Positions 21,134 through 45,804 of a stretch of 64,000 nucleotides of DNA are shown one piece after another. Position 1 is the first letter of the stretch, and each line of letters opens with the position of its first letter. This DNA is from Mytilus trossulus (lineage: Eukaryota), in the NCBI RefSeq assembly GCF_036588685.1, contig NC_086376.1, positions 22,134,001 through 22,198,000 on the forward strand. Reading direction: 5' to 3'. The notes beneath the pieces were generated by a model. The model was not told the DNA's origin, ran no database searches, and saw only the letters and a program-made list of their open reading frames with translations. A program made the position numbers and the translations under genes.

Positions 21134-21485
21134 GTAAGTTTACTACTTTATATCAGCTTAAATCTTGATACTGGAAAACTATCATTCCGTGTTTCTTGAA
21201 ATATTTTAAAGCTGATAATATAATCAGCTGCCATCCTCGCTAGTTGATGTTGAGTACTATTGTCCTTTTGCGTCAATAGGAAATGAGAGCAATGTTATCA
21301 AAGTTAACAATTTTAGTATTTTGGATTGTACAACTTGATTCGCCATGATGAACCAGGGTCATGTTCTGTGCATGTAACATGTATCTTTACTGCCTTTTTG
21401 AAATACTTGCTGTCGACATTTAGAATGAAAGATTTTTACTTTCAACAATAAAAAAGTAATTTATACAGTAATATCTCTATTACAG

Positions 21486-21552
21486 CTAATTGGTATGAAG
21501 ATCCAGATAATGGTGGTACTTATGTTATATGTGGTAATGCCAGTGGTTCAGG
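21486..21552 (+). CDS. Nav coding exon 6: DI extracellular turret (SNWYEDPDNGGTYVICGNASGSG)
   Basis: attacag / GG|gtgagt, 67 nt, phase 1 to 2. Conserved CGNxS motif. Confidence 0.93.
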
Positions 21553-21752
21553 GTGAGTGTATATAATGGTTGCATACTTATGTTATATGTGGTAATGCCA
21601 GTGGTTCAGGGTGAGTGTATATAATGGTTGCATACTTATGTTATATGTGGTAATGCCAGTGGTTCAGGGTGAGTGTATATAATGGTTGCATACTTATTTT
21701 ATACATGTATGTGGTCATGCCCATGGTTAAGGATGAGTGTATATAATGGTTG
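21517..21752 (+). repeat. 58-bp tandem repeat (3 near-perfect plus 1 degenerate) overlapping the 3' end and donor of exon 6
   Basis: Units start at 21517, 21575, 21633 and 21691. Confidence 0.95.
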
Positions 21753-28417: not shown

Positions 28418-28772
28418 GTTTCCCTCAACTAGTCCAAAACATTTCCATAGTACTTTGAAATACCTAGCTATAATTTGTTTTCTTTAATTCAAATGAGAGG
28501 AAATGTGGGCTACATCAATTAGACAACAAAGTCAGGGTTTTATGTATAAGATACCTTTTTGCAGGAATATGCATTGTATCTACATAATGTATCAACCTGA
28601 TGTAACCAATTTGTGGAAATCACCAGATACCTATGGTCCTAGAACTGATCTTTCTTGATTGGTCTATGGACTAATCTATCTAATGTTCCTAACTATTAAG
28701 TGTACCTAATTTTTCAGATCATCCGTGCCTCTGGTCCATGGAATGTTTTATCTAATATTCCTAATTTTTCAG

Positions 28773-28907
28773 ATCATTCGTGCCTCTGGTCCCTGGAATG
28801 TTCTGTTCTTTGTTATTGTTGTATTCTTTGGATCATTTTACCTGATAAACTTGATGTTAGCTGTCGTGGCTATGTCCTACCAAGAAGAGGCTGTCAGTGC
28901 AGGGAAG
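28773..28907 (+). CDS. Nav coding exon 8: DI S6 ([45 protein letters not shown])
   Basis: tttttcag / AAG|gtacga, 135 nt, phase 0 to 0. [16 protein letters not shown] motif. Confidence 0.96.
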
Positions 28908-30672
28908 GTACGAATACAATAATTATAAAAAATATAATGTAGATTTTATTTGCTTTGAATTTACTTTTGCTGTAGATTTTTTCACAATATTACTGTTTTG
29001 CTTATTTTCCATTTAAAGATATAAATATACTGAACTAACAATAATTTCAGATGATTTGTATATTAACAATATTAATGTCAGCATTATTATACATATGAAT
29101 TAGATTTATCAAGGTCTCCTGTAAACATGGTAAAGTTTAAACATTCGAGAAATCGTAGCACTTGAGTTTTATTCATATTATGGTTCATTTCATCATCACA
29201 AGTTAATCCATTATATTTTGTTTCAAATTATTTCACTATTTTCATTTTCTCACTTTATTTTATTAGATATTCATGTGAATTTTCAGGTTTGGCGTTTTGG
29301 ACCAAGATCATACCCCCTGGTATACCATCTTCCATACTTTTTATAATGTCAATGTTTAACTCTAAATTGACTCTCTACAGAAACAGTGCATTATTAGATA
29401 CATCAAGAAAAATATAAATGGTTGATTTTATTTGATTTTGGAAACAGACTCCCACAAAAGTAAATTTCCTAAAAGAAACAATTTAGACCCCTTCAATAGT
29501 TGTTTTAGTAGGTCTTTGTTGTTAAACAACTACTATTAAATCTATGATGCAATAAAGACGATCAAATTTTGAATAATTCATGCGTAATTAAAATTCAAAT
29601 AATGTAATTCTTTGAGAAAATTGCTGTTGTTACATGGTCGATTTACATGTTTTATATGGGTCTGTTTCAAATAGATATCAATAAAGGTTAAAAGTTTGAG
29701 GAATTCTCACATAAGTATTTCATTTCAAGTTGAATTTAAATATATTTTTCTTGTATATCAGATAATGCACTGTACCATTACCTTAGTATCACTTCCAGGG
29801 AAGCATGGGGTATTTTGCATGTTTATTTCACAATCTCTGAAAATGAGACTGCAAGTTTTTTATTATTGACTTTACCTCCGCAACATCTATGAGCAATGTT
29901 ACTGAGATGCTGATATTTGTTTTTAAATATCTTCATACTGTAATAGCAGAAATACTAACAAAAGTTTTGTATTATTTTGAAAGAATATTGTAATTGGATG
30001 AATGTCACAGTTATGGGAACTAATATTTAAAAATTATAGCATTTTTTCATTTGCAAAATATCCTTCAATTACATTTACAAATCTGACATATTTGTCTTCT
30101 TCAGTAAAAAGAAAAAGATTTAAAGTTGAACAAGATATATATCTTCATTTGATTCTCTTAACAACTTATTTTTTAATGTTTAATTAAAAATCAGAAGAAC
30201 GATAAAATATTTTATAGAATTTATGATTGATAAGGAAAAGCATGGAGATCACTGATAAACAACTCTTACTTAGTATATTTATTTAGTACATCATAAGACA
30301 TATATCACCATTTTGTGACTCACAGTGAGAAAAATAAGTTATAACTTCAACTTCATTTTTATGAGATTGTGCGGTTTAGCCAGAAATGTAAATTTATAGT
30401 GACTTAAATCTGCTTACATAGTAATGCATGTGACATATTGTAAAGAAAGCTTTCAATATTTGCTGAATGGACAGATTCTGTAGACAGCTAGAGCAGTTTT
30501 TATATATCGAAACCCTACAATATGTACTCAAGAAATAGTAATCTAGAAATATGGACTTTGCCTTTGAAGCATCATATTTGATAATTGTAGAATTTTAATC
30601 ATGAAAATATCTTTATAAAGATAGCCTCATTATGACAAATCTGATATGTTTTTCATGCTAATCATTACTTAG

Positions 30673-30684
30673 GAAGAACTACAG
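30673..30684 (+). CDS. Candidate microexon, 12 nt (EELQ), DI-II linker
   Basis: catgctaatcattacttag|GAAGAACTACAG|gtagtc. Phase 0, purine-rich, CTAAT branch-like motif upstream. Donor only moderate. Confidence 0.55.
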
Positions 30685-33351
30685 GTAGTCAAAAATCAAA
30701 ACTGTTGTTTTACCTGATGCACCATGAAATACCAGCACAAATAATCCTTCCTAAAAATCCTAACTTCGTCAGTTTGTTGCCAGTTGGCATACCTAATACA
30801 TTTGTTCACTATACTTCATTTCAATACAATGTTTTTTTCAGATTGATTAAAAAAAAAGAATCTGTGTAAATTATCAGTTTCTTATAGCAGCATAGCAAAA
30901 GATTTAAATGAAAAAAAACGGCCATAACTTTTTATCCGAGTTTACCATGAAAACAAAATTATATTTTTAAAGTTTTACTTCAAGAATGTCTCATAAAAAC
31001 TCTGTAGAGATTGTAATGCTACAATAATTTGTACAACTAAAAGGAATTCTAAATGTTGAGACATTTTTTTGAAACTAGAATGACACTAGAATGATTTGGT
31101 GAAAAGTTTTCATGAAATTTGGAATAAAGTTACCCATGTTTGTACTGTAAACACTGTACTGCATATTTCCCCAGGTTGTTAATTTTAGCAATATCAATGA
31201 ATAAATTTATTTGCACAGTAGTTGTATTTCCGCTGAAACAATATTTGTTAGCCCACCACACCAATATTGATGCTTTAGCCCTGGCTTGAAAATTTCCACA
31301 TTTCACCGCTTTTGGCAATACTCTGTACTGTTTCACCCAACTATTATGTTTTGAAGAAAGAAGGGTTGATTTGAAAGACCTGCTCGATGAAAAAATAAAC
31401 AAATTCGTCATGAGAGATTTTTTCTCCAAAAATGACCTTTTTTTATACTAACAATCTCAATAGCTGTTTCGTTTACGATGCTTGTTTTCTCCCTGTTTTT
31501 TATAAGACTAAACAAAAGCTATATGTTAGCTTTGGCTGTTAGATATTGCTTTTGTGAATTTTATTTTACCATATTTTGTGCCTTTGCTGGTTTTCTTATT
31601 CATTCAAGTCAACAGCTTTAAAGTAGTGTATAGTCTTAATGGACTTCTTGCATATATTATATATATATGTGCTTTGTAATAGCTTTGAAATAATTGAGTT
31701 TAAAATAAGACAGTATGGTGTCCCAGTATATCTGATGATGTACGTAGTCATGACTGATATATATTAGTCCTACTTATGTCTAGGAAATATTAAACTGTAA
31801 AGTATTTCAATTTATTGTTTCTTAAATATCAGTAGTACATATTATTCTAGAAGGGGGAGAATTTAGACAGCTGGCCTTTCATCAGTTACTTCAGGAGCTA
31901 ATGCTATGACTTGCAAAATAAATTGGAACTGAATGCTTATATTAGTTTAAATTCTTATAGTTACTTAGTTATCAGTGTACTAAAGAAAATTCAATACATT
32001 AATTGTTAATTGGTTATGAAAATCAATTTTAATGTTTCTGGACCAGGAACCTAATCAATAGAAAGTAATAAATGAAAAATAGTTTGGTCTTGGATTCTAA
32101 CAACAAAGTGTTGAAGCTCTTTTTTTAAGCTTGTCCTCATCGTGCATTAAATATTTGCTACTGGATATTTAGTAACTAACCATCAAGTTAAGGGCTTTCA
32201 TTGGGGGAGATCAAGAAAAAGGGGCCCAAGTCAGCAAATCATGAATTTTTTAAGGCCCTGTGACAGTTGGATCGAGGCATAATTTTTTTTTGTTCAGCTT
32301 GTATTAGGAACTATATTTATATAAAAATTTTGTCCATGAATAAGTTGTTAAAATGTTCTCACTATAAATATTTCTTATCAACAAAATTGGAAGTATTGTT
32401 TACACTACATTGCCAACATTTTATTGCATAAGTGAAATCACAACAGCCAATGTTTTACATAAATTTCAGACTAAATGCTAATTGCTATCTTTACTGCAGA
32501 CTGAATACTAATGCTTATGTTAAGTGAGCTCTATACACTTGAATTGATTCGCTTTATGCTTCGATTTCATCAATTATTAAATGTGATTTGTTTCTGATTG
32601 ATCTTTATACCTTCACAAGCTAAACAATATGCTAAAAATTGATTGAAATTTTATGTTCTTTGCCTTTTATTGTGGTGATTGAATATTGAATGAAAGAAAA
32701 ACGGGATAAATTTAAGTTTAATTGATCTATGCTCATTTTATTGTTTTGCAAGGTTTCTGCTGAGTTTGCTTTTTAGTTGTCAACATGAAAAAGGATCACA
32801 CTGCTTATCTTGCTTTTATTAGGATCATCAATACATCTAAACAATTTTCAATATCGGTAAAATTGAAAAATTATCTAAAATTGTTTGTCTTATATCCGCC
32901 ATAAATTGTGAGTGTCTGTTAAAGTTATAAGTGTTTATTAAGTCTGAAATAGGGCTTTGATTCCATGAAACATAAGTTTGATTAATATATCCATAAAGTT
33001 CTCTTTATTAAACCTTTTTCGTCCTTATTAATATTTGTACAACACATACTGACCATATGATTAACTTGGAATTGAGATATTAAAAGTACTGAAGTACTTG
33101 GACAAGATAAAGCCTTTTGTGCTGATGCTGCACAAATCAATCACCAATCACTGAAGATTATAGTACATTTACTTCTCTTACAGACATAAGTTATGCAATA
33201 GACAGACTCTTGTGTATCAAATTTCTGAAATAATATGACTTGTCAATCAACTGTTATTTTATATAAATGTAGGGAACTATTAGTATTACTTTTTAAATAC
33301 TATTCACAATAACATTACTCTCTTCCAATTATTGCTGCTTTTGGCAATCAG

Positions 33352-33360
33352 AAGAAAAAG
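33352..33360 (+). CDS. Candidate microexon, 9 nt (KKK), DI-II linker
   Basis: ctctcttccaattattgctgcttttggcaatcag|AAGAAAAAG|gttagt. Phase 0, TGC motifs just upstream of the acceptor. Confidence 0.55.
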
Positions 33361-33363
33361 GTT

Positions 33364-34401
33364 AGTTGCTATGTAGATCAGTGAAGCATGTTGTACTGTT
33401 ATTCAGACAAGTTGTTATGTAGCATGTTGTACTGTTATTCAGACAAGTTGTTATGTAGATCAGTGTGGCATGTTGTACTGTTATTCAGACAAGTTGTTAT
33501 GTAGATCAGTGTAGCATGTTGTACTGTTATTCAGACAAGTTGTTATATAGATCAGTGTAGCATGTTGTACTGTTATTCAGACAAGTTGTTATGTAGATCA
33601 GTGTAGCATGTTGTACTGTTATTCAGACAAGTTGTTATGTAGATCAGTGTAGCATGTTGTACTGTTATTCAGACAAGTTGTTATGTAGATCAGTGTAGCA
33701 TGTTGTATTGTTATTCAGACAAGTTGTTATGTAGATCAGTGTGGCATGTTGTACTGTTATTCAGACAAGTTGTTATGTAGATCAGTGAAGCATGTTGTAT
33801 TGTTATTCAGACAAGTTGTTATGTAGATCAGTGTAGCATGTTGTACTGTTATTCAGACAAGTTGTTATGTAGATCAGTGAAGCATGTTGTACTGTTATTC
33901 AGACAAGTTGTTATGTAGATCAGTGTGGCATGTTGTACTGTTATTCAGACAAGTTGTTATGTAGATCAGTGTGGCATGTTGTACTATTATTCAGACAAGT
34001 TGTTATGTAGATCAGTGTGGCATGTTGTACTGTTATTCAGACAAGTTGTTATGTAGATCAGTGTAGCATGTTGTACTGTTATTCAGACAAGTTGTTATGT
34101 AAACCAGTGTAGCATGTTGTACTGTTATTCAGACAAGTTGTTATGTAGATCAGTGTAGCATGTTGTACTGTTATTCAGACAAGTTGTTGTGTAGATCAGT
34201 GTAGCATGTTGTACTGTTATTCAGACAAGTTGTTATGTAGATCAGTGTAGCATGTTGTACTGTTATTCAGACAAGTTGTCATGTAGATCAGTGTAGCATG
34301 TTGTACTGTTATTCAGACAAGTTGTTATGTAGATCAGTGTAGCATGTTGTACTGTTATTCAGACAAGTTGTTATGTAGACCAGTCATGTTGTACTGTTAT
34401 T
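33364..34401. repeat. 46-bp minisatellite, about 22 copies, each containing GCATG
   Basis: Unit tgttgtactgttattcagacaagttgttatgtagatcagtgtagca. Confidence 0.95.
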
Positions 34402-36095
34402 GTTTGTTCAATCAGTCTTTGCTTACAGAAAATCTTTCATTTTATTTATTTTTTTGATAATTTATTTTAGTTTTTTTAGCTCACCTGGCAAAAGAGCCAG
34501 TTTGAGTTATCGCCATCACAGGCATCACCTGTTGATGGCAACAATTTAACTTTTACGTTCACTCTTCATCTCCACTCTTCATCTCCGACTAAAAGTTTAT
34601 TTGAAACATTCCAGAAGGGATTTGTTCATTACTGTACAGTGTAAAACTTCTCAATTTGTAGTTTCTTAAAAATTTAATTAGATATGCCCATAGGATACTG
34701 TAGCTATCATTAAAATATTTGTAAAATTCATATGAAAGTTTATTTTTAAAGAGCGTTTTCTTTGATGAAATGTATTGGGAAATATTTGTTTGTGTATGAT
34801 TTGATCAGTTACTACTCACTAGAAAGTTTGAAAGTGAATGATCTATATATCAAAGTCTTTTTTGATATGACAGAGAAACATTTATGAGTTACAAAACCCT
34901 ATAACTTAATATACCTATACATGTATTTGATTGCCATAATTGATTATTTCTACATTTTTTAAGAATTTATGGGTGTGCATTCACTGTGCAAATATCTTTT
35001 AAAATTTTGTAAATTAGTAAAAATTTAATTTATATAAGAATTACTGTTTGTGCTATTCAGGTGAAATTAGATTTGATATAAAGTTCCAAAGTATATTAAA
35101 TAGTGAAGGATTTTATTTGTTATTTTTTCTTAAGTAATAAAATTCAATAATAATATCAGTCACCAAGCTTTACGGGAGGTATCAATGATTCTATATATAA
35201 TCTCAATCAAATAAAAATATCAAATTGGGAGATATTTTTTTGCTTTTCTTTAAATGTTCATTTGACTATGATGAATTGAGTATAGCAGCATGTCATGTAT
35301 GTTATATCTGGTTAAAACAAGACAATGTTGATTGCTTTAAACCCCACAAAGATCAATTGTTTCTCAAATTTTTTATTAAAGATGAAATATGACATTATAA
35401 AACAGATAGTCTTTCACAATGTTATGTATATCGTTGAAATTGGGAATTGAAATACATGTACATGTGGCCTTCGGCTGTTGTCTGCTCTATGGTCGGGTTG
35501 TTATTGCTTTGACACATTCCACATTTTCATTCTCACTTTTATGTTCATGTAAATATGAGATTATGTAACACACAAGTCTTATATGTGGTACAGAAAATTC
35601 CCCTTATTGATGTGGCCCTTCCTTTTCACATTGTACTTTTTCAGTTTATAAGAATACCTCATTCCACCCATTATACAGATTTAGTATATACATTGTATTG
35701 TTATGTGAAAGAATACAAAGTACTTACTAAATAAATGATAAATAGAAACGCTTACGTAGATCCAGACGATATATTCAAAGAGATTAGTAACTTATATTGA
35801 TTAGCAAACATTTTGAAATTAATAAATAATGAATATTTGCTTCATTACTGAAGATTGAAAGCCCTTAAAAAATAAAATCAATAAAAGAAATTCTTTCAAA
35901 AAATGGAATTATCACTTGCATTCCTTTATATATCCTTCTTTATAGATAATTTTATTATTTGATATGATCTATTACAGTTCATTTCCCACAGTTATGATGT
36001 TATGATAGAAATGCTTAGTGAAAATGGGGGGGGGGAGGGGGGGAGGGTAAACTAACTCTAAATAGAACACAAGGAACAGAAAAATTGAAGTCATA

Positions 36096-36598
36096 TTTTT
36101 ATGCCCCACCTACGATAGTAGAGAGGCATTATGTTTTCTGGTCTGTGCGTCCATTTGTCTGTCTGTCTGTCTGTTCGTTCGTCTGTTTGTCTGTTCCTTC
36201 GTCCGTCCGTTCGTCCGTCTGTCCCACATCAGGTTTAAGTTTTTGGTCAAGGTAGTTTTTGATGAAGTTGTAGTCCAATCAACTTGAAACTTAGTACACA
36301 TGTTCATTATGATATGATCTTTCTAATTTTAAAGCCAAATTAAACTTTTGACCCCAATTTCACGGTCCACTGAACATAGAAAATGAAAGTGCATGTTTCA
36401 GGTTAAAGTTTTTGGTCAAGGTAGTTTTTGATGAAGTTGAAGTCCAATCAACTTCAAACTTTGTACACATGTTCCCTATGATATTATCTTTCTAATGTTA
36501 ATGCCTAATTATATTTTTTATCCAATTTCATGGTCCATTGAACATGGAAAATGATAGTGCAAGTGGGGCATCCGTGTACTTTGGACACATTCTTGTTT
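36096..36598. mobile_element. HINE-like element (ATGCCCCAC...GTGGGGCAT) with (GTCY)n microsatellite
   Basis: Subterminal inverted repeats, tetranucleotide microsatellite, two internal repeats of about 180 bp, and 3' hairpin. A 5'-truncated copy lies at about 59379-59658. Confidence 0.75.
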
Positions 36599-36768
36599 TG
36601 TTTGCTTTATTTCAAAATTGGTAAAAGAAAAGATTCAATAAGAAGTTTTAGTTTGTGCACACACTGACTGATCAGTTGCATGTTACATATATGAAGCCTC
36701 AACTTCTTACACTTTGAGTTTACATATAAAGTGTAAATTGATCAAATATTTTGTTTTCTAACCTATAG

Positions 36769-36783
36769 GAAGAACAAGCATTG
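36769..36783 (+). CDS. Candidate microexon, 15 nt (EEQAL), DI-II linker
   Basis: ttttgttttctaacctatag|GAAGAACAAGCATTG|gtaagt. Consensus donor, phase 0. Confidence 0.75.
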
Positions 36784-37078
36784 GTAAGTCTACTGCAGAC
36801 AGCTTATATGTTGGGTTACCGGCTAAACAAGCAAACGCTTTATTGTTGGTTTATCATTATAATTGTGTTCCTTATCATCATCAAATCATTTGGCATGGTT
36901 AATTTCATTTACAATTGCAGTGCCTTTTATTTACAAGAATTGATCATTCAATTTAAAATAGTGTTTTTAGCTTTTTAATAATTATGCTGTCTTTATGATG
37001 TTTATCAAAATACAGATTTGATGGTTTCAGCAAAGTTTTGTTATTGTTATTATTAAAGCTGGAACTGTTTCACATTTA

Positions 37079-38388
37079 TTTTTAGCTCACCTGGCCCGAA
37101 GGGCCAAGTGAGCTTTTCTCATCACTTGGCGTCCGTCGTCTGTCGTCCTCCGTCGTCGTCGTCCGTCGTCGTCCTGCGTCCGGCGTTAACTTTTACAAAA
37201 ATCTTCTCCTCTGAAACTACTGGGCCAAATTTAACCAAACTTGGCCACAATCATCATTGAGGTATCTAGTTTGAAAATTGTGTCCGGTGACCTTGCCAAC
37301 CAACCAAGATGGCTGCCATGGCTAAAAATAGAACATAGGGGTAAAATGCAGTTTTTGGCTTATAACTCAAAAACCAAAGCATTTAGAGCAAATCTGACAT
37401 GGGGTAAAATTGTTTATCAGGTTAAGATCTATCTGCCTTGAAATTTTCAGATGAATCTGACATTCCCTTGTTAGGTTGCTGCCCCTGAATCAGTAATTTT
37501 AAGGAAATTTTGCTGTTTTTGGTTATTATCTTGAATATTATTATAGATAGAGAAAAACTGTAAACAGCAATAATGTTCAGCAAAGTAAGATCTACAAATA
37601 AGTTAACATGACCAAAATGGTCAGTTGACCACTGTAGGAGTTATTGCCCTTTATAGTCAATTTTTAACCATTTTACGTAAATCTTAGTTATCTTTTAGAA
37701 AAATCTTCTCCTCTGAAACTACTGGGCCAAATTAATTGAAACTTGGCCACAATCATCTTTGCGGTATCTAGTATAAAAATTGTGTCCGGTAACTTGGCCA
37801 ACCAACCAAGATGGCGGCCATGGCTAAAAATAGAACATGGGAGTAAAATGCAGTTTTTGGCTTATAACCCAAAAAACAAAGCATTAAGAGCAAATCTGAC
37901 AGAGTTGAAATTGTTGATCAGGTCAAGATCTATCTGCCCAGGAATTTTCAGATGAATTGGATCATCGGTTGTTAGGTTGCTGCCCCTAAATTGGTAATTT
38001 TGAGGAAATTTTGCTGTTTTTTTGTTATTATCTTGAATATTATTATAGATAGAGATAAACTGTAAACAGCAATAATGTACAGTAAAGTAAGAACTAAAAA
38101 TGAGTCTACATGACCAAAATAGTCAATTGACCCCCTGAGGAGTTATTGCCCTTCATAGTCATTTTTTAACAATTTTCACAAAATTTGTAGATTTTCACTA
38201 ACATTTTCCACAGAAACTACTGTTATAGATAGAGATAATTGTAAGCAGCAAAAATGTTTAGTAAAGTAAGATCTTCAAACACATCACCATCACCAAAACA
38301 CAATTTTGTCATGAATTCATTTGTGTACAATGTTTAATATTAACATAGACCAAGGTGAGCGACACAGGCTCTTTAGAGCCTCTAGTTT
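37079..38388. mobile_element. Non-autonomous Helentron/HINE-like element, copy 2 (same family as 27154-28417)
   Basis: Same termini, longer (GTC)n microsatellite, perfect hairpin AGGCTCTTTAGAGCCT. A truncated relative lies at about 34471-34525. Confidence 0.82.
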
Positions 38389-39247
38389 ATATTCACTATT
38401 TTTTTGCACATATAAAAAAGATTTTATTTTACAAATTGAAGCCCGAATTTTGCCCTTGTGACAAGCACATTCTGGTATTAGTTTATGATCATTACTGTTT
38501 TAATATCAAATGTTCTGACAAAAGTCTTTCTGTCCAAAACATTACAGAAAATGTTACTGAAAAAGAAACATGTTGTTCACAATAATTCCTCTCACTGTAT
38601 CTAATATTACAATTTTGTCCTGTAAAAATGGTCGATCTAAAACATTTTTGTAGAATATTTGCCCCACAACATCAACATTGATTCAGTTCCAAAAGCTAGT
38701 TCGGTGTTATTTGACTATTTTTATGTTCTGTTGATTTAATAACATGTTGATGTGAAGAGTTTAAAAAATAACTAAAATTGTTGAAAGACTATAGAATTTT
38801 ATTTACATGTTGCTGTGCATATATGTGCAAGTTAACATTGAGGCATAATGTAATAAATAACCTGTGTATATAAAGTACAATGGAGATATATGCCTAAAAT
38901 TTTTGAAAGTCATAATTTCAATAATCTATTGTAACTAGGATGGAGAGTTGTCTCATTAGCACTCATACTACATCTTCTCTATATGTATGATATACAAATG
39001 TATAAAAATATTAACCAAAAAAAATCTTTTATTTTACAAGTAATATAAAATCAAAATGCTTCATCTTAAAAACAATTATATTTTTGATAAAATGAAATAA
39101 AAACTAAAGAAAAAAAACATTGTGTCTTTCTCAAAGGTAAAAGGTAAATGTTCCTTAATTCATTGGTGGTAAAATAAGGAAATATTATATACAGATAAAG
39201 TTTTCAATGAATTTATATATTTGTAAATTTTATTTTTGTGAATGCAG

Positions 39248-39271
39248 CAAAAGCATGAGGATGAGAAAAAG
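39248..39271 (+). CDS. Candidate microexon, 24 nt (QKHEDEKK), DI-II linker
   Basis: ttttatttttgtgaatgcag|CAAAAGCATGAGGATGAGAAAAAG|gtatta. Phase 0, charged peptide matching the composition of the next exon. Confidence 0.65.
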
Positions 39272-40993
39272 GTATTATGAATTAACAGCTATATATGAAT
39301 GAAATTTTAAAAAAGCTATATTATGTTGTCTCCTTGGTGATGGCCCCAATTGCAGCATAAGTTCTGGAATACCCTTTCCTCAAAAAAAAAAAGAAGGAAT
39401 ATAGCTATTCTTTAACAGTATATTTTTGTATGATAATATGACTGTTATAGTATTTATTTTCCTATCTTGAGGGGCTTTCCATAACCAGCTTGAGAATTAA
39501 CCTAACCCGTTTTTAATGAAAATAACTTGGCATGAAAATTATCTCCCCTTTTCTGTGACCATAATTTATAAGAATTTTTTTACCCAAATATTATATTGAA
39601 ATTGCCTTTCTCTACATTTAGTATTCAGATATTTTGCATGTATTCTTTAGACCTAGAGTGTATTATTTTACAGCAGCTTTTATGATTTAATAATACTGTA
39701 ATATTGTGTGATTATACAATTATTTTATGCTATAATCGAGTGTGATGATTATTTTGATGGTTGGATATATTGGTCAATTGTTAGTATGTGAAACTAAAAA
39801 CTCTTTTCCAAGATTCATTGGGACAGAAATAACCCATTGATAATATTTTTAGGCTAATTAAGTAATTATTGTTTTGTATGTTGATTATATCTGGTGTAAT
39901 TACAGGAATAAAAAGATGCTATATATGTGAATGGAATTGCATTACCAAGAAGGAAATTAAATAATTATGTATCTGTGTTCCCGTGTTGTGAAAAACATAA
40001 TTGTTAATCAATTTTGAGCGAAATGTCTTAATTAACTGTCGTCTCCAACCATTTAAATATCAAAATTAAACTTCATATAGATTTTAAACATTAATGAGTC
40101 GAGGAAATTAATGTTGCTTTTTTTTTCATATTGATTCTCAGTTTGATGGTATAAATGTTACAGAATCCACGTATAAAAGTTCACATGAGACGGGATTATT
40201 ATAGACCAGATATTGTTACATATGTTGTTTCAAATATTTAATACCAATGAATGAATCTTTTGCATAACATAATTCTTTCTATTGAATAAATGGATTACAA
40301 ACTATGTAATTTATAAAAACAGAATATCTATCCATGGTCACTTTCATGTCCTCGTAATGTGTCAGATTAACAAAGTTTTCTTTTTAGGTGTAATCCCTTG
40401 AAATAATATTTGTTTGAAACGATTATTGAGTAAATGTATTGTTTGATTCATGATCACTAAACGTTATAAATAACATCAATCGTTACAATTTTTCTTCTAT
40501 TTGCTTCTCAACTTAGGGTTTGTCATTTAATCTTTAATTTAAGAGAAAGAAAATTCTTAAAGATCATGATCAACTTTTGTATGAAAACATTTTTTGATTT
40601 TTTTTCATCTATATTTAACTGTTTAATTGTTTAACTTGACTTTTAAGTTACCATTTAGAACCAGTTTGGGTTATAGTTTTAATAAAATCAATAACCCTTT
40701 ATTATACAATCCTGGAAGTTATGAAAACTTTTACAGAAGCTATATTTCATACATGATTGAGATTCAAAAGTTTGATATTGTTCATTTCTGTTGTCCTGAG
40801 TCCTCATTTTACCACACAAACCTTCATTGCATTTGCCAAATTTAGATATAACAAGAGACAACACCCTGAGCAAAACTTAAATTTTTCTAGTAATCATAGT
40901 TTTTTGCAGTCAACATAACACTTATAAACTAATAGAAGCAGTCCTAGATGAGACATGGGGGATTTTTATAATACTGTTTATTATTTATTATAG

Positions 40994-41428
40994 GAAAAAG
41001 CAGATAATGAAAAGAAACAGAAAGAAAGAGAAAAACAAAAGCTAAAGGAATTAACAAGTGCTACAAAAGCTGCTCAAAAATGGAATCCAGGACATCGAAA
41101 AAACAAAACAGGGATACTAGATAAAACCCAAAAAGATTCTGGTTCTAAAAATGACAAAAATGACAAAAAGTCTGATACAACCAATGGTGAACCTCTTATC
41201 AAATATGGGAAAGGTAGAAATCCAATGGTTAAAATGCCCAGTAAAGACAGTGGTTATTCTGTGGGAAGTAAAGGTAGCTCTCAATCTAATGGAAAAGATA
41301 CACCTAGAGATGAAGGGGACAATGATAGCTGGGATAGCGACTCTAATCCTCGGAAAGCAGACTCTGGAACAGGATCTCTTAGCCAAGAACCAGTCTATGA
41401 AAAGAAGACTAAATTAAAAGAATTAAAT
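40994..41428 (+). CDS. Nav coding exon 9: DI-II cytoplasmic linker (EKADNEKKQKEREKQK...SKDSGYSVGS...KLKELN)
   Basis: ttattatag / AAT|gtaagc, 435 nt open, phase 0 to 0, same frame as ORF 41225-41476. Confidence 0.9.
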
Positions 41429-42598
41429 GTAAGCTATACTAAAATTCAGATGTTTTATTTAACACAAAGATTGTAACCTAACAGCATGCCAAAAAATAAA
41501 GTCTTATAATGGGCAAGTGCACATACTGTGGATTCATTATTATTTGTTGGCTGCCAATTTTCGTCAATTTTCATGGTAACCCTGGAAGGACAAATTTTGA
41601 TTTCAACGAATCACAAATTTTCTTTAAGAATGTATGCAGATTTTGGCAGAACCACAACATCAAATATCCAGGAAAATGTATGATTTCCAAAATTCATGAA
41701 AATTGGTTCCCACAAAAACAAATGAATCTACAGTATATATATACTTAAATACATTCAAATAGAAATAATTTGATATACTGGTAAATATGTTAGCTTCTAT
41801 TCAGAATAGAATCTTTGATCAAGATTTTTCATAATCTGTTGTCTCAGAGGTGTCCTGTAATTGGGTCAGAGGTCACCGTACTTGGTACTGTATGTGCCTA
41901 ATTATTCAACCATCATGTGACCATGTAAGTATTTAGGGTATTTAAACATGGCATCCTGAATTTTACAAGAATATTGGTATAAAATCAAATATTTTGCATT
42001 TTAGCCCATTTTTATATAAATTGCAGTCTCTTTATACCCAAATATTTCTTTAAAAATTAAGACACGAAATTGTTCATTTGATTTTATCTCATGATCCCTC
42101 AAATTGGTAATACATAAATGGCGGAAATATGGCAATAATCTGGAAATGTTTAACAAGATATCTTGGGTTATCCATTGATTTTTATGTGTGACTTGTTATT
42201 GTTACCAGCAAATTAAAGTCTAATTAGGGATTTTTATTACTATACAATAAAACACGAAGGATTTATTTAATAATATGATCCTTGTATTAAATAATTCCAA
42301 CATAGTTACTGATCCAAAACAGATTAAGTTTGGATTGAATAAGAGCTAATTTGTTTTCGATAAAATCTGTAGTTGTCACATTTTGATAAATTTGGACGAT
42401 AGACGAACATTTTGTCATGCATTTAATGCAATAAAAACAGCATAATTAAATTTTGTATCAGGCCATTTATGTAACTTAAATCTACATTTTACCAAATGTT
42501 TATTCGTTGTTAGAGAATGATTATCCTGCTGTGGAGTAGACCCACAAAATCATATGACTATATAAGGAACAAGAAGGTCAAGTCTGGATGTCTGTTAA

Positions 42599-43331: not shown

Positions 43332-43346
43332 GGTGGAATGACACAT
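43332..43346 (+). CDS. Candidate microexon, 15 nt (GGMTH)
   Basis: tttttactttatactacacag|GGTGGAATGACACAT|gtaagt. Phase 0. Confidence 0.62.
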
Positions 43347-44706
43347 GTAAGTTACTGAAATAGTGTGTAAATGTTACATTTCTTGCTGAAATGTCATGTA
43401 TGTTACAACTGTTCATGTAGCTAAGCACTCTGTAAATGTACATATAACTGTGGATTCATTTATTTTCATGGGGACAACTTTTGGTGGATTAGTGAAATCT
43501 TACATGTTCTTGAATATATTTAATTTCTTGGTTTTACCTGATTTTGCATTCAAGTCGATAGAAAGTTCAATTTTTGTTGCACATGTATATTAATTGAATC
43601 CACAGCATAGCACAACCCTGTATGTTACATCTGAAGCTGAGCACCCTGTAACTGTACATTTTATAGCACATCCCTTATCTATGTTTGACATCTGTCTTAT
43701 TTACTCTAACCAGGTTGTATAATTGTCCTATTCTCAAAGACTATTATTGCTGTAAGGCTGTAACTATTGTAATGATTAAGTTATTGAGAAATTCATTTGG
43801 GCTGCTGTTCCTTGAGTAGTTCCAATGATATATGTTATCTGCATTGGTTAGGAAAATGGAATGGAGACTACCGTATTTGAAACCACCCACTCATGCAGTC
43901 AGGCAATGAGGATCAGTTGACTTTAAACTTTCTATTTCAACATTTGCATTATTCTATTGAAGTAGTTCACAGGAGAGGCATAATTATCTTTGTTTGAACA
44001 TTTTATTTATAAACAAGGTTTATTGGTACATTAGGTATTAACGAGTAATCCCTGAATGTTGACCTTGAGAGGTCTTTCTGTTTCGTTTCATCGTTGAATT
44101 GCATGTCTCCCTTGCACTACTTTTCCTCTTTTTTTTAGACTCGGATTGGATTTGAGTCTTTATTGTCCAAAGCTTTAGTTTCAGGTGTTTTCTGTTCATA
44201 TAAATTTTGTAACCTGTCTTATATTTTTTATGATCTCTACGGTTTCTTCAATATCAAATTGTGGATTTACTTATTATCTCCCTTTAAAAAATATTTTGTT
44301 TGTTAAATTCTAACCTTAAATGAGGGTAACATTTGAATGTTTTGCAGATGTAGTAACTACTTTGAATGTGTTTACTACATGTTTTAAAATCCTAAGATTT
44401 CAACTACTATTCAGTTCTGTCAACATTGTATGAATATGTTTTCACCTCCCTCTTGCCCTTATAATAGTTCGTTATCACCACTTGTGTATTAAATGTGAAT
44501 TACAAGTACCAAGTGATCTTACAAGCTGTCATAGATAAATATTGACCATCAAAGTAAATTTAAACTGTTACTTGTTAGAAGGTACTTATATACTTCATGT
44601 TTGACTATTTACTTATAAACAGACGGGCAAAATTTTTTAATTATCTACATGTCTATAGTGAAAAGGTAGAAATTTAAAGATAATATATGAATATTACTTT
44701 TTTCAG

Positions 44707-44718: not shown

Positions 44719-45327
44719 GTAAGAAGGATTTCATTTTTAAAATAATATGTGGTATCTTTCATGGTTGAAATGTTTTACAATAATCTATTTTCCTCCTTTT
44801 AGGGTGTTTTGTATCTTTTTAAAGTATGGGCATTGGACAATTTAATAATGTACTAATAATTTGTCTAAAAGACATACGAATAGCTTCAGACAATAAAAGC
44901 ACTGACAGAATTTAAAACTGTATTCATACTTTCTTTGTTTCCAGGAATATGACTAGTATATATAGATTTGGCTTAGTCTTGGTCAATAACTTAAATTCTT
45001 ATATTTACAAATGTTTCTTTGATCTGACACATTCCCATGAAAATAATTGATTAATTCCAGAATCCAATTACCATACTACTTTCAAAATTAAACTACCAGA
45101 ATAAAATTGAAAAAAAGTTAACCAAACCATAGAAAATTATTTTTGTGTAGTAGTTCATTGAATTTCTTTCCTAAACTTTACTAGAACTTAATCAGTAAAT
45201 ATTTCTGAATTATTTGGTTTAGAAAAAGGACAAATGGCGTAGGTCAGCCAAGCTTTTTTGGAAAGCATATACTAGTTTACAGCATTCAAAAACTGTCATC
45301 AACTCGTTGAATATCAATCTTTTTCAG

Positions 45328-45789: not shown

Positions 45790-45804
45790 CGCCGAATCAC
45801 TGTT
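45790..45804 (+). CDS. Candidate microexon, 15 nt (RRITV; PKA consensus)
   Basis: ttttatacctatttatag|CGCCGAATCACTGTT|gtgagt. Phase 0, two CpG-containing Arg codons in CpG-poor intron sequence. Confidence 0.65.

What the first reader, a model, noticed from the sequence alone, without database searches (positions are those of the whole stretch)
28908..40993. Array of four in-frame microexons that would build a variable-length charged helix directly after DI-S6
Seen: the apparent 12-kb intron contains four AG-flanked, GT-ended, phase-0 segments, about 3 kb apart, at 30673 (12 nt, EELQ), 33352 (9 nt, KKK), 36769 (15 nt, EEQAL) and 39248 (24 nt, QKHEDEKK). Spliced in order they read ...[51 protein letters not shown], a seamless E/K/Q-rich helix matching both flanking exons. 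Three have TGC motifs close to the acceptor. Established: the segment after IS6 of Nav/Cav channels is helical and coupled to the activation gate, and SRRM3/4 (eMIC)-dependent neural microexons have UGC motifs near the 3' splice site. Inference: combinatorial inclusion (up to 16 isoforms, steps of 3/4/5/8 aa) would change the length and rotational register of this helix, acting as a splice-coded dial on gating or partner binding. I know of no such array described for a Nav2 channel, and standard annotation would miss it.
Basis: partly seen in the sequence, partly recalled or inferred. Interest (0 to 1): 0.88.

Follow-up and report, generated by a model that had tools for sequence, protein, structure and literature searches.

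The report
Alternative microexons in mussel Nav2 linker

Summary
Partly confirmed and largely already annotated. The four AG...GT phase-0 segments sit exactly where stated.

- **Gene:** a Mytilus Nav2/DSC1-type channel with a DEEA pore ring and an MFLT motif.
- **Validated:** EEQAL (36769-36783) and QKHEDEKK (39248-39271) are optional cassette exons in RefSeq isoforms of M. galloprovincialis, M. edulis, M. trossulus and M. californianus. QKHEDEKK is also in an M. coruscus model.
a 33-nt exon, VWRFGPRSYPL (29287-29319), which is the commonest insert in the models.
- **Isoform patterns:** six combinations of these three exons occur. The 33-nt exon and EEQAL never occur together.
- **Unsupported:** EELQ and KKK appear in none of the 28 Mytilus models I could read at this junction. 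About 1.5 such loci are expected by chance. KKK does have top-1% splice signals.
- **RNA:** contigs are spliced at 40994 and 41428, and their edges fit the annotated patterns. No junction was seen directly.
- **Structure:** AlphaFold models give one continuous S6-linker helix when all exons are skipped, broken by the 33-nt exon.
- **Other bivalves:** scallops, venerid clams and Mya carry optional inserts at the same junction.

The claim that standard annotation would miss the exons is wrong for the two real ones.

The parts
28773..28907 (+). Constitutive exon for DI-S6. It ends ...[13 protein letters not shown] in phase 0, with donor gtacga.
   Evidence: It is identical in all Mytilus isoforms.
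29287..29319 (+). Real optional 33-nt exon, VWRFGPRSYPL (ttttcag|GTTTGG...CCCCTG|gtatac).
   Evidence: It is in RefSeq isoforms of M. edulis, M. galloprovincialis and M. trossulus, and as VWRFGKRSLPL in M. coruscus. The peptide maps only here in the intron. It is predicted non-helical.
30673..30684 (+). Candidate 12-nt exon, EELQ. Unsupported.
   Evidence: The sequence is as stated. It is absent from the 28 Mytilus models read at this junction. Its splice-signal score is in the top 7% of 701 in-frame candidates. It is single copy in the genome.
33352..33360 (+). Candidate 9-nt exon, KKK. Unverified but plausible.
   Evidence: The sequence is as stated. It is absent from the 28 Mytilus models read at this junction. 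Its splice-signal score ranks 7th of 701 candidates, below three validated microexons. It has a 66-nt AG-free zone upstream and the donor gttagt. It is single copy.
33418..34401 (+). 46-nt minisatellite, 21.5 copies, with GCATG in each unit. It starts beside the KKK donor.
   Evidence: The repeat-like sequence already begins at 33361.
36769..36783 (+). Real optional 15-nt microexon, EEQAL.
   Evidence: It is in M. galloprovincialis X6 and M. edulis X6, and as EEQEL in M. californianus X5, X8 and X9. It maps uniquely. It has the best splice score of all 701 candidates.
39248..39271 (+). Real optional 24-nt microexon, QKHEDEKK.
   Evidence: It is in isoforms of M. trossulus, M. galloprovincialis, M. 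californianus and M. coruscus. It maps uniquely. RNA-run depth in its bin for X5 (1.5) equals a 23-nt piece of the 10.9-deep contig. That last step is inference.
40994..41428 (+). Next constitutive exon, EKADNEKKQKEREKQKLKELTSATKAAQKW.... It starts with a predicted helix.
   Evidence: RNA contigs end their match exactly at both exon borders. The helix is residues 485-513 and 437-503 in the two models.

Best explanation
This intron of a Mytilus Nav2 (DSC1/CaV4-type) channel gene is an alternative-splicing hot spot. It sits at the phase-0 junction directly after DI-S6.

**Shown**
- The intron holds three real optional cassette exons: 33 nt (VWRFGPRSYPL), 15 nt (EEQAL) and 24 nt (QKHEDEKK).
- Public isoform models show six combinations of them.
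- The 33-nt exon and EEQAL appear to be alternatives to each other. QKHEDEKK is added or left out independently.

**Inferred mechanism**
- With all exons skipped, S6 runs on as one long E/K-rich helix into the I-II linker, up to a conserved ...ATKAAxKW motif.
- EEQAL and QKHEDEKK lengthen that helix by 5, 8 or 13 residues. This changes the distance and rotational register between the gate and the motif.
- The Gly/Pro-containing basic-aromatic 33-nt exon instead puts a break or hinge at the foot of S6.

**The other two segments**
- EELQ is most likely a chance match, with about a 10% chance of being real.
- KKK is unproven, with roughly a 30-40% chance of being real.
For: **Isoform models**
- RefSeq and other gene models of five Mytilus species carry the three peptides between SAGK and EKADNEKK. 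The patterns are none, E33, E33+ME4, ME3, ME3+ME4 and ME4. E33 is the 33-nt exon, ME3 is EEQAL and ME4 is QKHEDEKK.
- Each peptide maps to a single AG...GT segment of the intron.

**RNA contigs**
- Contigs from four runs and four studies match only the exon 40994-41428 and stop at its borders.
- In X1 and X9 the match starts at 40993. The preceding exon therefore ends in a non-A base followed by G, as the 33-nt exon (..CTG) and EEQAL (..TTG) do.
- In X5 the match starts at 40992, so the preceding exon ends in ..AG. This fits QKHEDEKK or a direct join.

**Channel type**
- DEEA ring and MFLT motif.

**Structure**
- AlphaFold2 gives helix 437-503 without a break in the skip form (pLDDT 61-70).
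- With the 33-nt exon it gives helix 435-473, a coil at 474-484, then helix 485-513.
- The EEQAL and QKHEDEKK inserts have no Gly or Pro and high helix propensity.

**Other bivalves**
- The same junction carries optional inserts in Argopecten, Pecten, Mercenaria, Ruditapes and Mya.
- These include a recurring basic-aromatic exon (RVWGRH, MxMF[KR]PY) and a 5-residue exon (LLEQL, LLKKL).
Against: - RefSeq isoforms are computed models. Which exons travel together on one full-length mRNA is not shown.
- My single read-laying run showed no microexon junction directly, because intronic repeats filled the tables.
- Both structure models are of low overall confidence, with mean pLDDT of 54 and 60.
- No model of an EEQAL- or QKHEDEKK-containing form could be made, because those proteins exceed the tool's size limit.
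- No functional data exist.
- Oysters show no variation at this junction.
- M. edulis models lack QKHEDEKK.
- Only 15 of the 41 members of the largest isoform cluster could be read.
Confidence: 0.75

Rival explanations
1. All four segments (EELQ, KKK, EEQAL, QKHEDEKK) are real microexons, included combinatorially to give up to 16 helix lengths.
For: - All four have AG/GT borders, are in phase 0 and code helix-prone charged residues.
- EELQ and KKK have long AG-free zones upstream, of 46 and 66 nt. EELQ also has a CTAAT branch-point-like site.
- KKK ranks 7th of 701 candidates on a splice score trained only on constitutive sites.
- Exons of 9-12 nt are the ones read aligners lose most easily. 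This last point is my own knowledge.
Against: - Neither peptide is in any of the 28 Mytilus models read at this junction, while 15-nt exons are annotated.
- About 1.5 such loci are expected by chance in this intron.
- The EELQ donor gtagtc is weak, and its score is only in the top 7%.
- The KKK donor is the edge of a minisatellite.
Confidence: 0.06
2. KKK alone is a further real exon, probably tissue-restricted. The GCAUG-bearing minisatellite at its donor would act as a downstream splicing enhancer of the Rbfox type.
For: - Its splice score is in the top 1%. The only higher-scoring candidates include three validated microexons (EEQAL, GGMTH, RRITV).
- 21.5 repeat units, each with GCATG, start right after its donor.
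- Rbfox sites downstream of an exon promote its inclusion. This is established knowledge.
Against: - There is no transcript or isoform evidence.
- Three other unvalidated candidates score as high (NLW, GVLYLFK, FVITTCVLN), so precision at this score is low.
- AAGAAAAAG is low-complexity sequence, and 13 KKK triplets occur in the three forward frames of the intron.
- The repeat unit reads AGCATG, not TGCATG.
Confidence: 0.3
3. The optional exons are real but functionally neutral. They would be tolerated length variation in a low-complexity, fast-evolving linker, with no role in gating.
For: - The I-II linker is poorly conserved and low in complexity.
- Oysters show no variation at this junction.
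- M. edulis models lack QKHEDEKK.
- The donors of the 33-nt exon and QKHEDEKK are weak.
Against: - QKHEDEKK is identical in four species, and EEQAL/EEQEL is kept across Mytilus.
- Analogous basic-aromatic and 5-residue exons recur at the same junction in scallops, venerid clams and Mya.
- All of these exons keep the reading frame.
Confidence: 0.2

Closest known systems
Alternative exons in the I-II linker of the oyster CgNav1 (exon 5, 27 nt / 9 aa; exon 7, 405 nt), PMC5295241
   Same: It is a bivalve four-domain channel with small in-frame optional exons in the DI-DII linker. Inclusion is tissue-specific, and two of the exons were never found together.
   Different: That channel is Nav1 (DEKA) and this one is Nav2 (DEEA). 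Here the exons sit at the very first junction after S6. There are three of them, 15-33 nt long. They are known only from computed RefSeq models, not from cloned cDNAs.
Optional 15-bp exon 11 of DSC1 orthologues (Liposcelis LbSC1, Drosophila DSC1 exons 11A-C), PMC3805903
   Same: The channel family is the same (DEEA ring, MFL-type motif). There is a 5-residue optional microexon in a cytoplasmic linker.
   Different: The insect exon lies in the II-III linker, not directly after DI-S6. Nothing there is described as extending or breaking a helix.
Neural microexons dependent on the eMIC domain of SRRM3/4 (Srrm234), enriched in ion channels in Drosophila, PMC8797185
   Same: The exons are short and frame-preserving, lie in an ion-channel gene, and have weak donors. 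QKHEDEKK has UGC directly before its acceptor.
   Different: Two of the three validated exons lack UGC. Neural specificity and dependence on Srrm234 were not tested. A search for the SRRM_C family in this genome was uninformative.
Rigid IS6-AID helix of CaV1/CaV2 channels, which couples the beta subunit to the gate (my own knowledge, not checked here)
   Same: A helix continuous with IS6 is predicted, and a conserved motif lies about 30 residues downstream.
   Different: No AID consensus is present and no partner is known for Nav2. The coupling here is inference only.

Membership tests
Nav2 / DSC1 / BSC1 / CaV4 four-domain channels | DEEA selectivity ring (D, E, E, A in domains I-IV) | tested here: met
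   P0245 has TLDFWE, CGEWIE, ATFEGW and STSAGW. The family criterion is stated in PMC3805903.
Nav2 / DSC1 / BSC1 / CaV4 four-domain channels | MFL-type motif in the III-IV linker, in place of MFM/IFM | tested here: met
   LDMFLTTTQRNY at residue 1459 of P0245. MFL in DSC1 orthologues is reported in PMC3805903.
Nav2 / DSC1 / BSC1 / CaV4 four-domain channels | Closer in sequence to arthropod 60E/DSC1 than to para | tested here: met
   In the region searched, arthropod 60E hits are 72-83% identical and para hits 63-64%. The M. coruscus and M. edulis submitters name the gene DSC1. No tree was built.
Nav2 / DSC1 / BSC1 / CaV4 four-domain channels | Ca2+-preferring permeation | not testable with these tools
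   This needs electrophysiology, as was done for honeybee CaV4 (PMC4969797, title and abstract seen).
Alternative cassette microexons | Short, frame-preserving, AG/GT-bounded, and found both included and skipped in transcripts | tested here: met
   This holds for EEQAL (15 nt), QKHEDEKK (24 nt) and the 33-nt exon. Isoforms with and without each exist in 3-5 species. RNA contig edges are consistent with this.
Alternative cassette microexons | The same criterion applied to EELQ (12 nt) and KKK (9 nt) | tested here: not met
   Neither is in any of the 28 Mytilus models read at this junction.
eMIC (SRRM3/4)-dependent neural microexons | UGC close to the 3' splice site | tested here: inconclusive
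   UGC is present at QKHEDEKK, EELQ and KKK, and absent at EEQAL and the 33-nt exon. The background is 17-27% of AG sites.
eMIC (SRRM3/4)-dependent neural microexons | Neural-specific inclusion that depends on an eMIC-bearing Srrm234 | not tested
   The run labels were coded and gave no tissue. The PF15230 search of the genome found nothing, and neither did its controls.
E/K-rich single alpha helix continuing S6 | A continuous helix predicted from S6 through the start of the linker | tested here: met
   Helix 437-503 in the skip-form model, with pLDDT 61-70 over residues 461-500. This is a prediction only, and overall pLDDT is 59.5.

The most novel reading that the evidence does not exclude
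KKK (33352-33360), and perhaps EELQ, are genuine exons restricted to a few cell types that computed annotation misses. On this reading, KKK inclusion is driven by the 21-copy GCAUG minisatellite that starts at its donor. The hot spot would then hold four or five cassette exons that set the length, register and continuity of the post-S6 helix of a Nav2/CaV4 channel.
Probability: 0.12. Interest if true: 0.55.

Novelty: new member of a known kind. Interest (0 to 1): 0.3.

Why it matters
Nav2/CaV4 channels are little studied outside insects, and nothing is published on their splicing in molluscs as far as my searches show. Optional exons at the foot of DI-S6 recur in mussels, scallops and clams. 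That gives a concrete, cheap set of isoforms to express and compare, and so a test of whether the length or continuity of the post-S6 helix tunes gating in this family.

The exons themselves are already in RefSeq, and the phenomenon of optional small exons in the I-II linker is well known for Nav channels. The finding is therefore useful but not surprising.

Tried and rejected
I could not fetch the orthologous introns of other bivalves, so conservation of EELQ and KKK at the DNA level was not tested.
- I used it on 36500-41500. Intronic repeats at 37000-38500 swamped the joint and loose-end tables, and no microexon junction was listed.
- **First protein search**, with the 145-aa exon, found only genomic exon ORFs and no transcript-derived fragments.
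- **Repeat of the listing of cluster members** returned the same 15 of 41 members. About 26 members, most of them presumably isoforms, remain unread.
- **PF15230 (SRRM_C) search** of the genome found nothing, and its controls also failed. This is uninformative.
- **Copy number:** EELQ and KKK are not inside repeated elements. This neither helps nor hurts them.
- **UGC as a marker of the real exons** was rejected.
- **Joined spliced model:** Exons were searched by reference. Only local junction checks were done inside scripts.
Full report
**1. The observation.**
The four segments are in the sequence exactly as described.
- 30673-30684: tag|GAAGAACTACAG|gtagtc, EELQ.
- 33352-33360: cag|AAGAAAAAG|gttagt, KKK.
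- 36769-36783: tag|GAAGAACAAGCATTG|gtaagt, EEQAL.
- 39248-39271: cag|CAAAAGCATGAGGATGAGAAAAAG|gtatta, QKHEDEKK.

The flanking exons are 28773-28907 (...[13 protein letters not shown]) and 40994-41428 (EKADNEKKQKEREKQKLKEL...).

The intron holds 342 in-frame, stop-free AG...GT segments of 6-30 nt. Many lie in a 46-nt minisatellite. I then required 9-24 nt, at least 60% E/K/Q/D/R, and a pyrimidine-rich stretch upstream. Markov shuffles of the intron give 1.5 +/- 1.2 such loci, with P(>=4) of 0.04-0.10, and the minus strand gives one. So four is more than expected, but two would not be.

**2. What the gene is.**
Protein searches place the window in Mytilus. It is closest to M. trossulus RefSeq proteins, at 96.8% identity over tblastn matches. 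M. galloprovincialis scores 95.4% and M. edulis 94.4%.

A full-length isoform (P0245) has the pore ring D/E/E/A and an MFLT motif in the III-IV linker. These are the marks of DSC1/BSC1/Nav2 channels, also called CaV4 (PMC3805903; PMC4969797). The submitters of the M. coruscus and M. edulis genomes call the gene DSC1.

**3. Which segments are real exons.**
I read the stretch between ...SAGK and EKADNEKK... in 28 Mytilus models. Six patterns occur.
- Nothing: M. edulis X15-X17.
- VWRFGPRSYPL alone: eight M. edulis isoforms.
- VWRFGPRSYPL + QKHEDEKK: M. trossulus X1-X3, five M. galloprovincialis isoforms, and M. coruscus as VWRFGKRSLPL + QKHEDEKK.
- EEQAL + QKHEDEKK: M. galloprovincialis X6, and M. 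californianus X5, X8 and X9 as EEQEL.
- EEQAL alone: M. edulis X6.
- QKHEDEKK alone: M. galloprovincialis X10.

Each peptide maps to one place in the intron. EEQAL maps at 36769, QKHEDEKK at 39248 and VWRFGPRSYPL at 29287-29319 (ttttcag|GTT...CTG|gtatac).

A third real exon, the most frequent in the models, was missed. EELQ and KKK are in none of these models. The 33-nt exon and EEQAL never occur together, although they could. Only 15 of the 41 members of the largest cluster could be read.

**4. RNA evidence.**
No run is on record as RNA. Even so, contigs from four runs of four studies match only 40994-41428, stop at its borders and carry further letters on both sides. They are therefore spliced transcripts.

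The match starts at 40993 in X1 and X9. This means the exon before it ends in a non-A base followed by G. That fits the 33-nt exon (..CTG) or EEQAL (..TTG). It does not fit a direct join, or QKHEDEKK, KKK or EELQ, all of which end ..AG.

In X5 the match starts at 40992, so the previous exon ends ..AG. The bin holding QKHEDEKK has depth 1.5, which equals 23 nt of that 10.9-deep contig. X7 also has depth there, while X1 and X9 have none.

This reading is inference from edges and depths. The joint tables were filled by intronic repeats and list no microexon junction.

**5. EELQ and KKK.**
Both are single copy. I built a splice-signal score from four features: pyrimidine content, length of the AG-free zone, a branch-point-like motif, and the intronic part of the donor. 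It was trained only on 12 constitutive acceptors and 11 constitutive donors of this gene. I applied it to all 701 in-frame candidates in the window's introns.
- The top three are EEQAL, GGMTH (43332-43346) and RRITV (45790-45804). All three are present in RefSeq isoform P0245, so the score has power.
- KKK ranks 7th, in the top 1%.
- EELQ is in the top 7%.
- The validated QKHEDEKK and the 33-nt exon score poorly (top 14% and 19%). Three unvalidated hydrophobic candidates score as high as KKK.

Against these points stand the absence of both from the models and the chance expectation of about 1.5 loci. My estimate is about 10% that EELQ is real and 30-40% for KKK.

UGC near the acceptor does not separate real from unproven exons. 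It is present at QKHEDEKK, EELQ and KKK, and absent at EEQAL and the 33-nt exon, against a background of 17-27%.

**6. How it may work (inference).**
AlphaFold2, run with an alignment of bivalve and other invertebrate homologues, gives the following.
- In the skip form there is one unbroken helix from S6 through the start of the linker, residues 437-503. pLDDT is 61-70 over residues 461-500 and 59.5 overall.
- With the 33-nt exon the helix ends at K473. Residues 474-484 (VWRFGPRSYPL) are coil with pLDDT below 50, and a new helix runs from 485 to 513.

EEQAL and QKHEDEKK contain no Gly or Pro and have high helix propensity. They would add 5, 8 or 13 residues.

About 30 residues after S6 lies the motif ...ATKAAxKW(K)P, shared by mussels, scallops and Tegillarca. 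The exons change its distance and register relative to the gate, or uncouple it through a hinge.

**7. Other bivalves.**
RefSeq isoforms of other bivalves differ at the same junction.
- Argopecten: LLKSHAKRK and/or RRVWGRHRM.
- Pecten: NRVWGRHTT.
- Mercenaria: EKRKMTMFKPYAEKGTE, or LLKKL, or nothing.
- Ruditapes: GKPKMKMFKQYADSENGTE, or LLEQL, or nothing.
- Mya: SKGRGMRMFRPYEDEKESDAKAPE, or nothing.
- Oysters show no variation there.

A basic-aromatic exon and a 5-residue exon thus recur at this junction. This argues against pure splicing noise.

**8. Comparison with what is known.**
Small optional exons in the I-II linker are well known for Nav1 channels. They include a 27-nt exon in the oyster CgNav1 (PMC5295241). 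A 15-bp optional exon is known in insect DSC1 orthologues, but in the II-III linker (PMC3805903). My paper searches found nothing on Nav2 splicing in molluscs.

The finding is a new member of a known kind.

**9. Limits.**

Noticed in passing
window 28706-28802: A 55-nt tandem duplication copies the acceptor and the first ~30 nt of the DI-S6 exon (ctaatttttcagATCATCCGTGCC... then ctaatttttcagATCATTCGTGCC...). Using the upstream acceptor at 28718 would add 55 nt and shift the frame. It looks like a decoy 3' splice site.
   Followed up: partly
window 43332-43346 and 45790-45804: Two 15-nt microexons, GGMTH and RRITV, in the next intron have the 2nd and 3rd best splice scores of 701 candidates. 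Both are present in RefSeq isoform P0245, which reads ...KELNGGMTHRRITVVSSSD....
   Followed up: partly
window 40007-40173: RNA-run contigs cover part of this intronic bin in three of four runs, with mean depth 3.5-21. The stretch is single copy and codes for nothing found in any isoform. It could be an unannotated non-coding or poison exon, an antisense transcript or pre-mRNA. This is unexplained.
   Followed up: partly
window 33418-34401: A 46-nt minisatellite of 21.5 copies at 96% identity has AGCATG in every unit. It begins right after the donor of the candidate KKK exon.
   Followed up: partly
window 21473-21669: The peptide TYVICGNASGSG at the end of an exon is encoded three times in tandem, at 21517-21552 (within the tblastn match 21473-21553), 21576-21611 and 21634-21669.
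   Followed up: no
window 34964-34972, 44803-44823, 44468-44494: Three in-frame candidates (NLW, GVLYLFK, FVITTCVLN) have splice scores as high as validated microexons, but appear in no isoform. They are probably false positives of the score.
   Followed up: no
window 37000-38500: Highly repeated intronic elements are present at very high depth in all four RNA-type runs. They are probably transcribed transposons.
   Followed up: no
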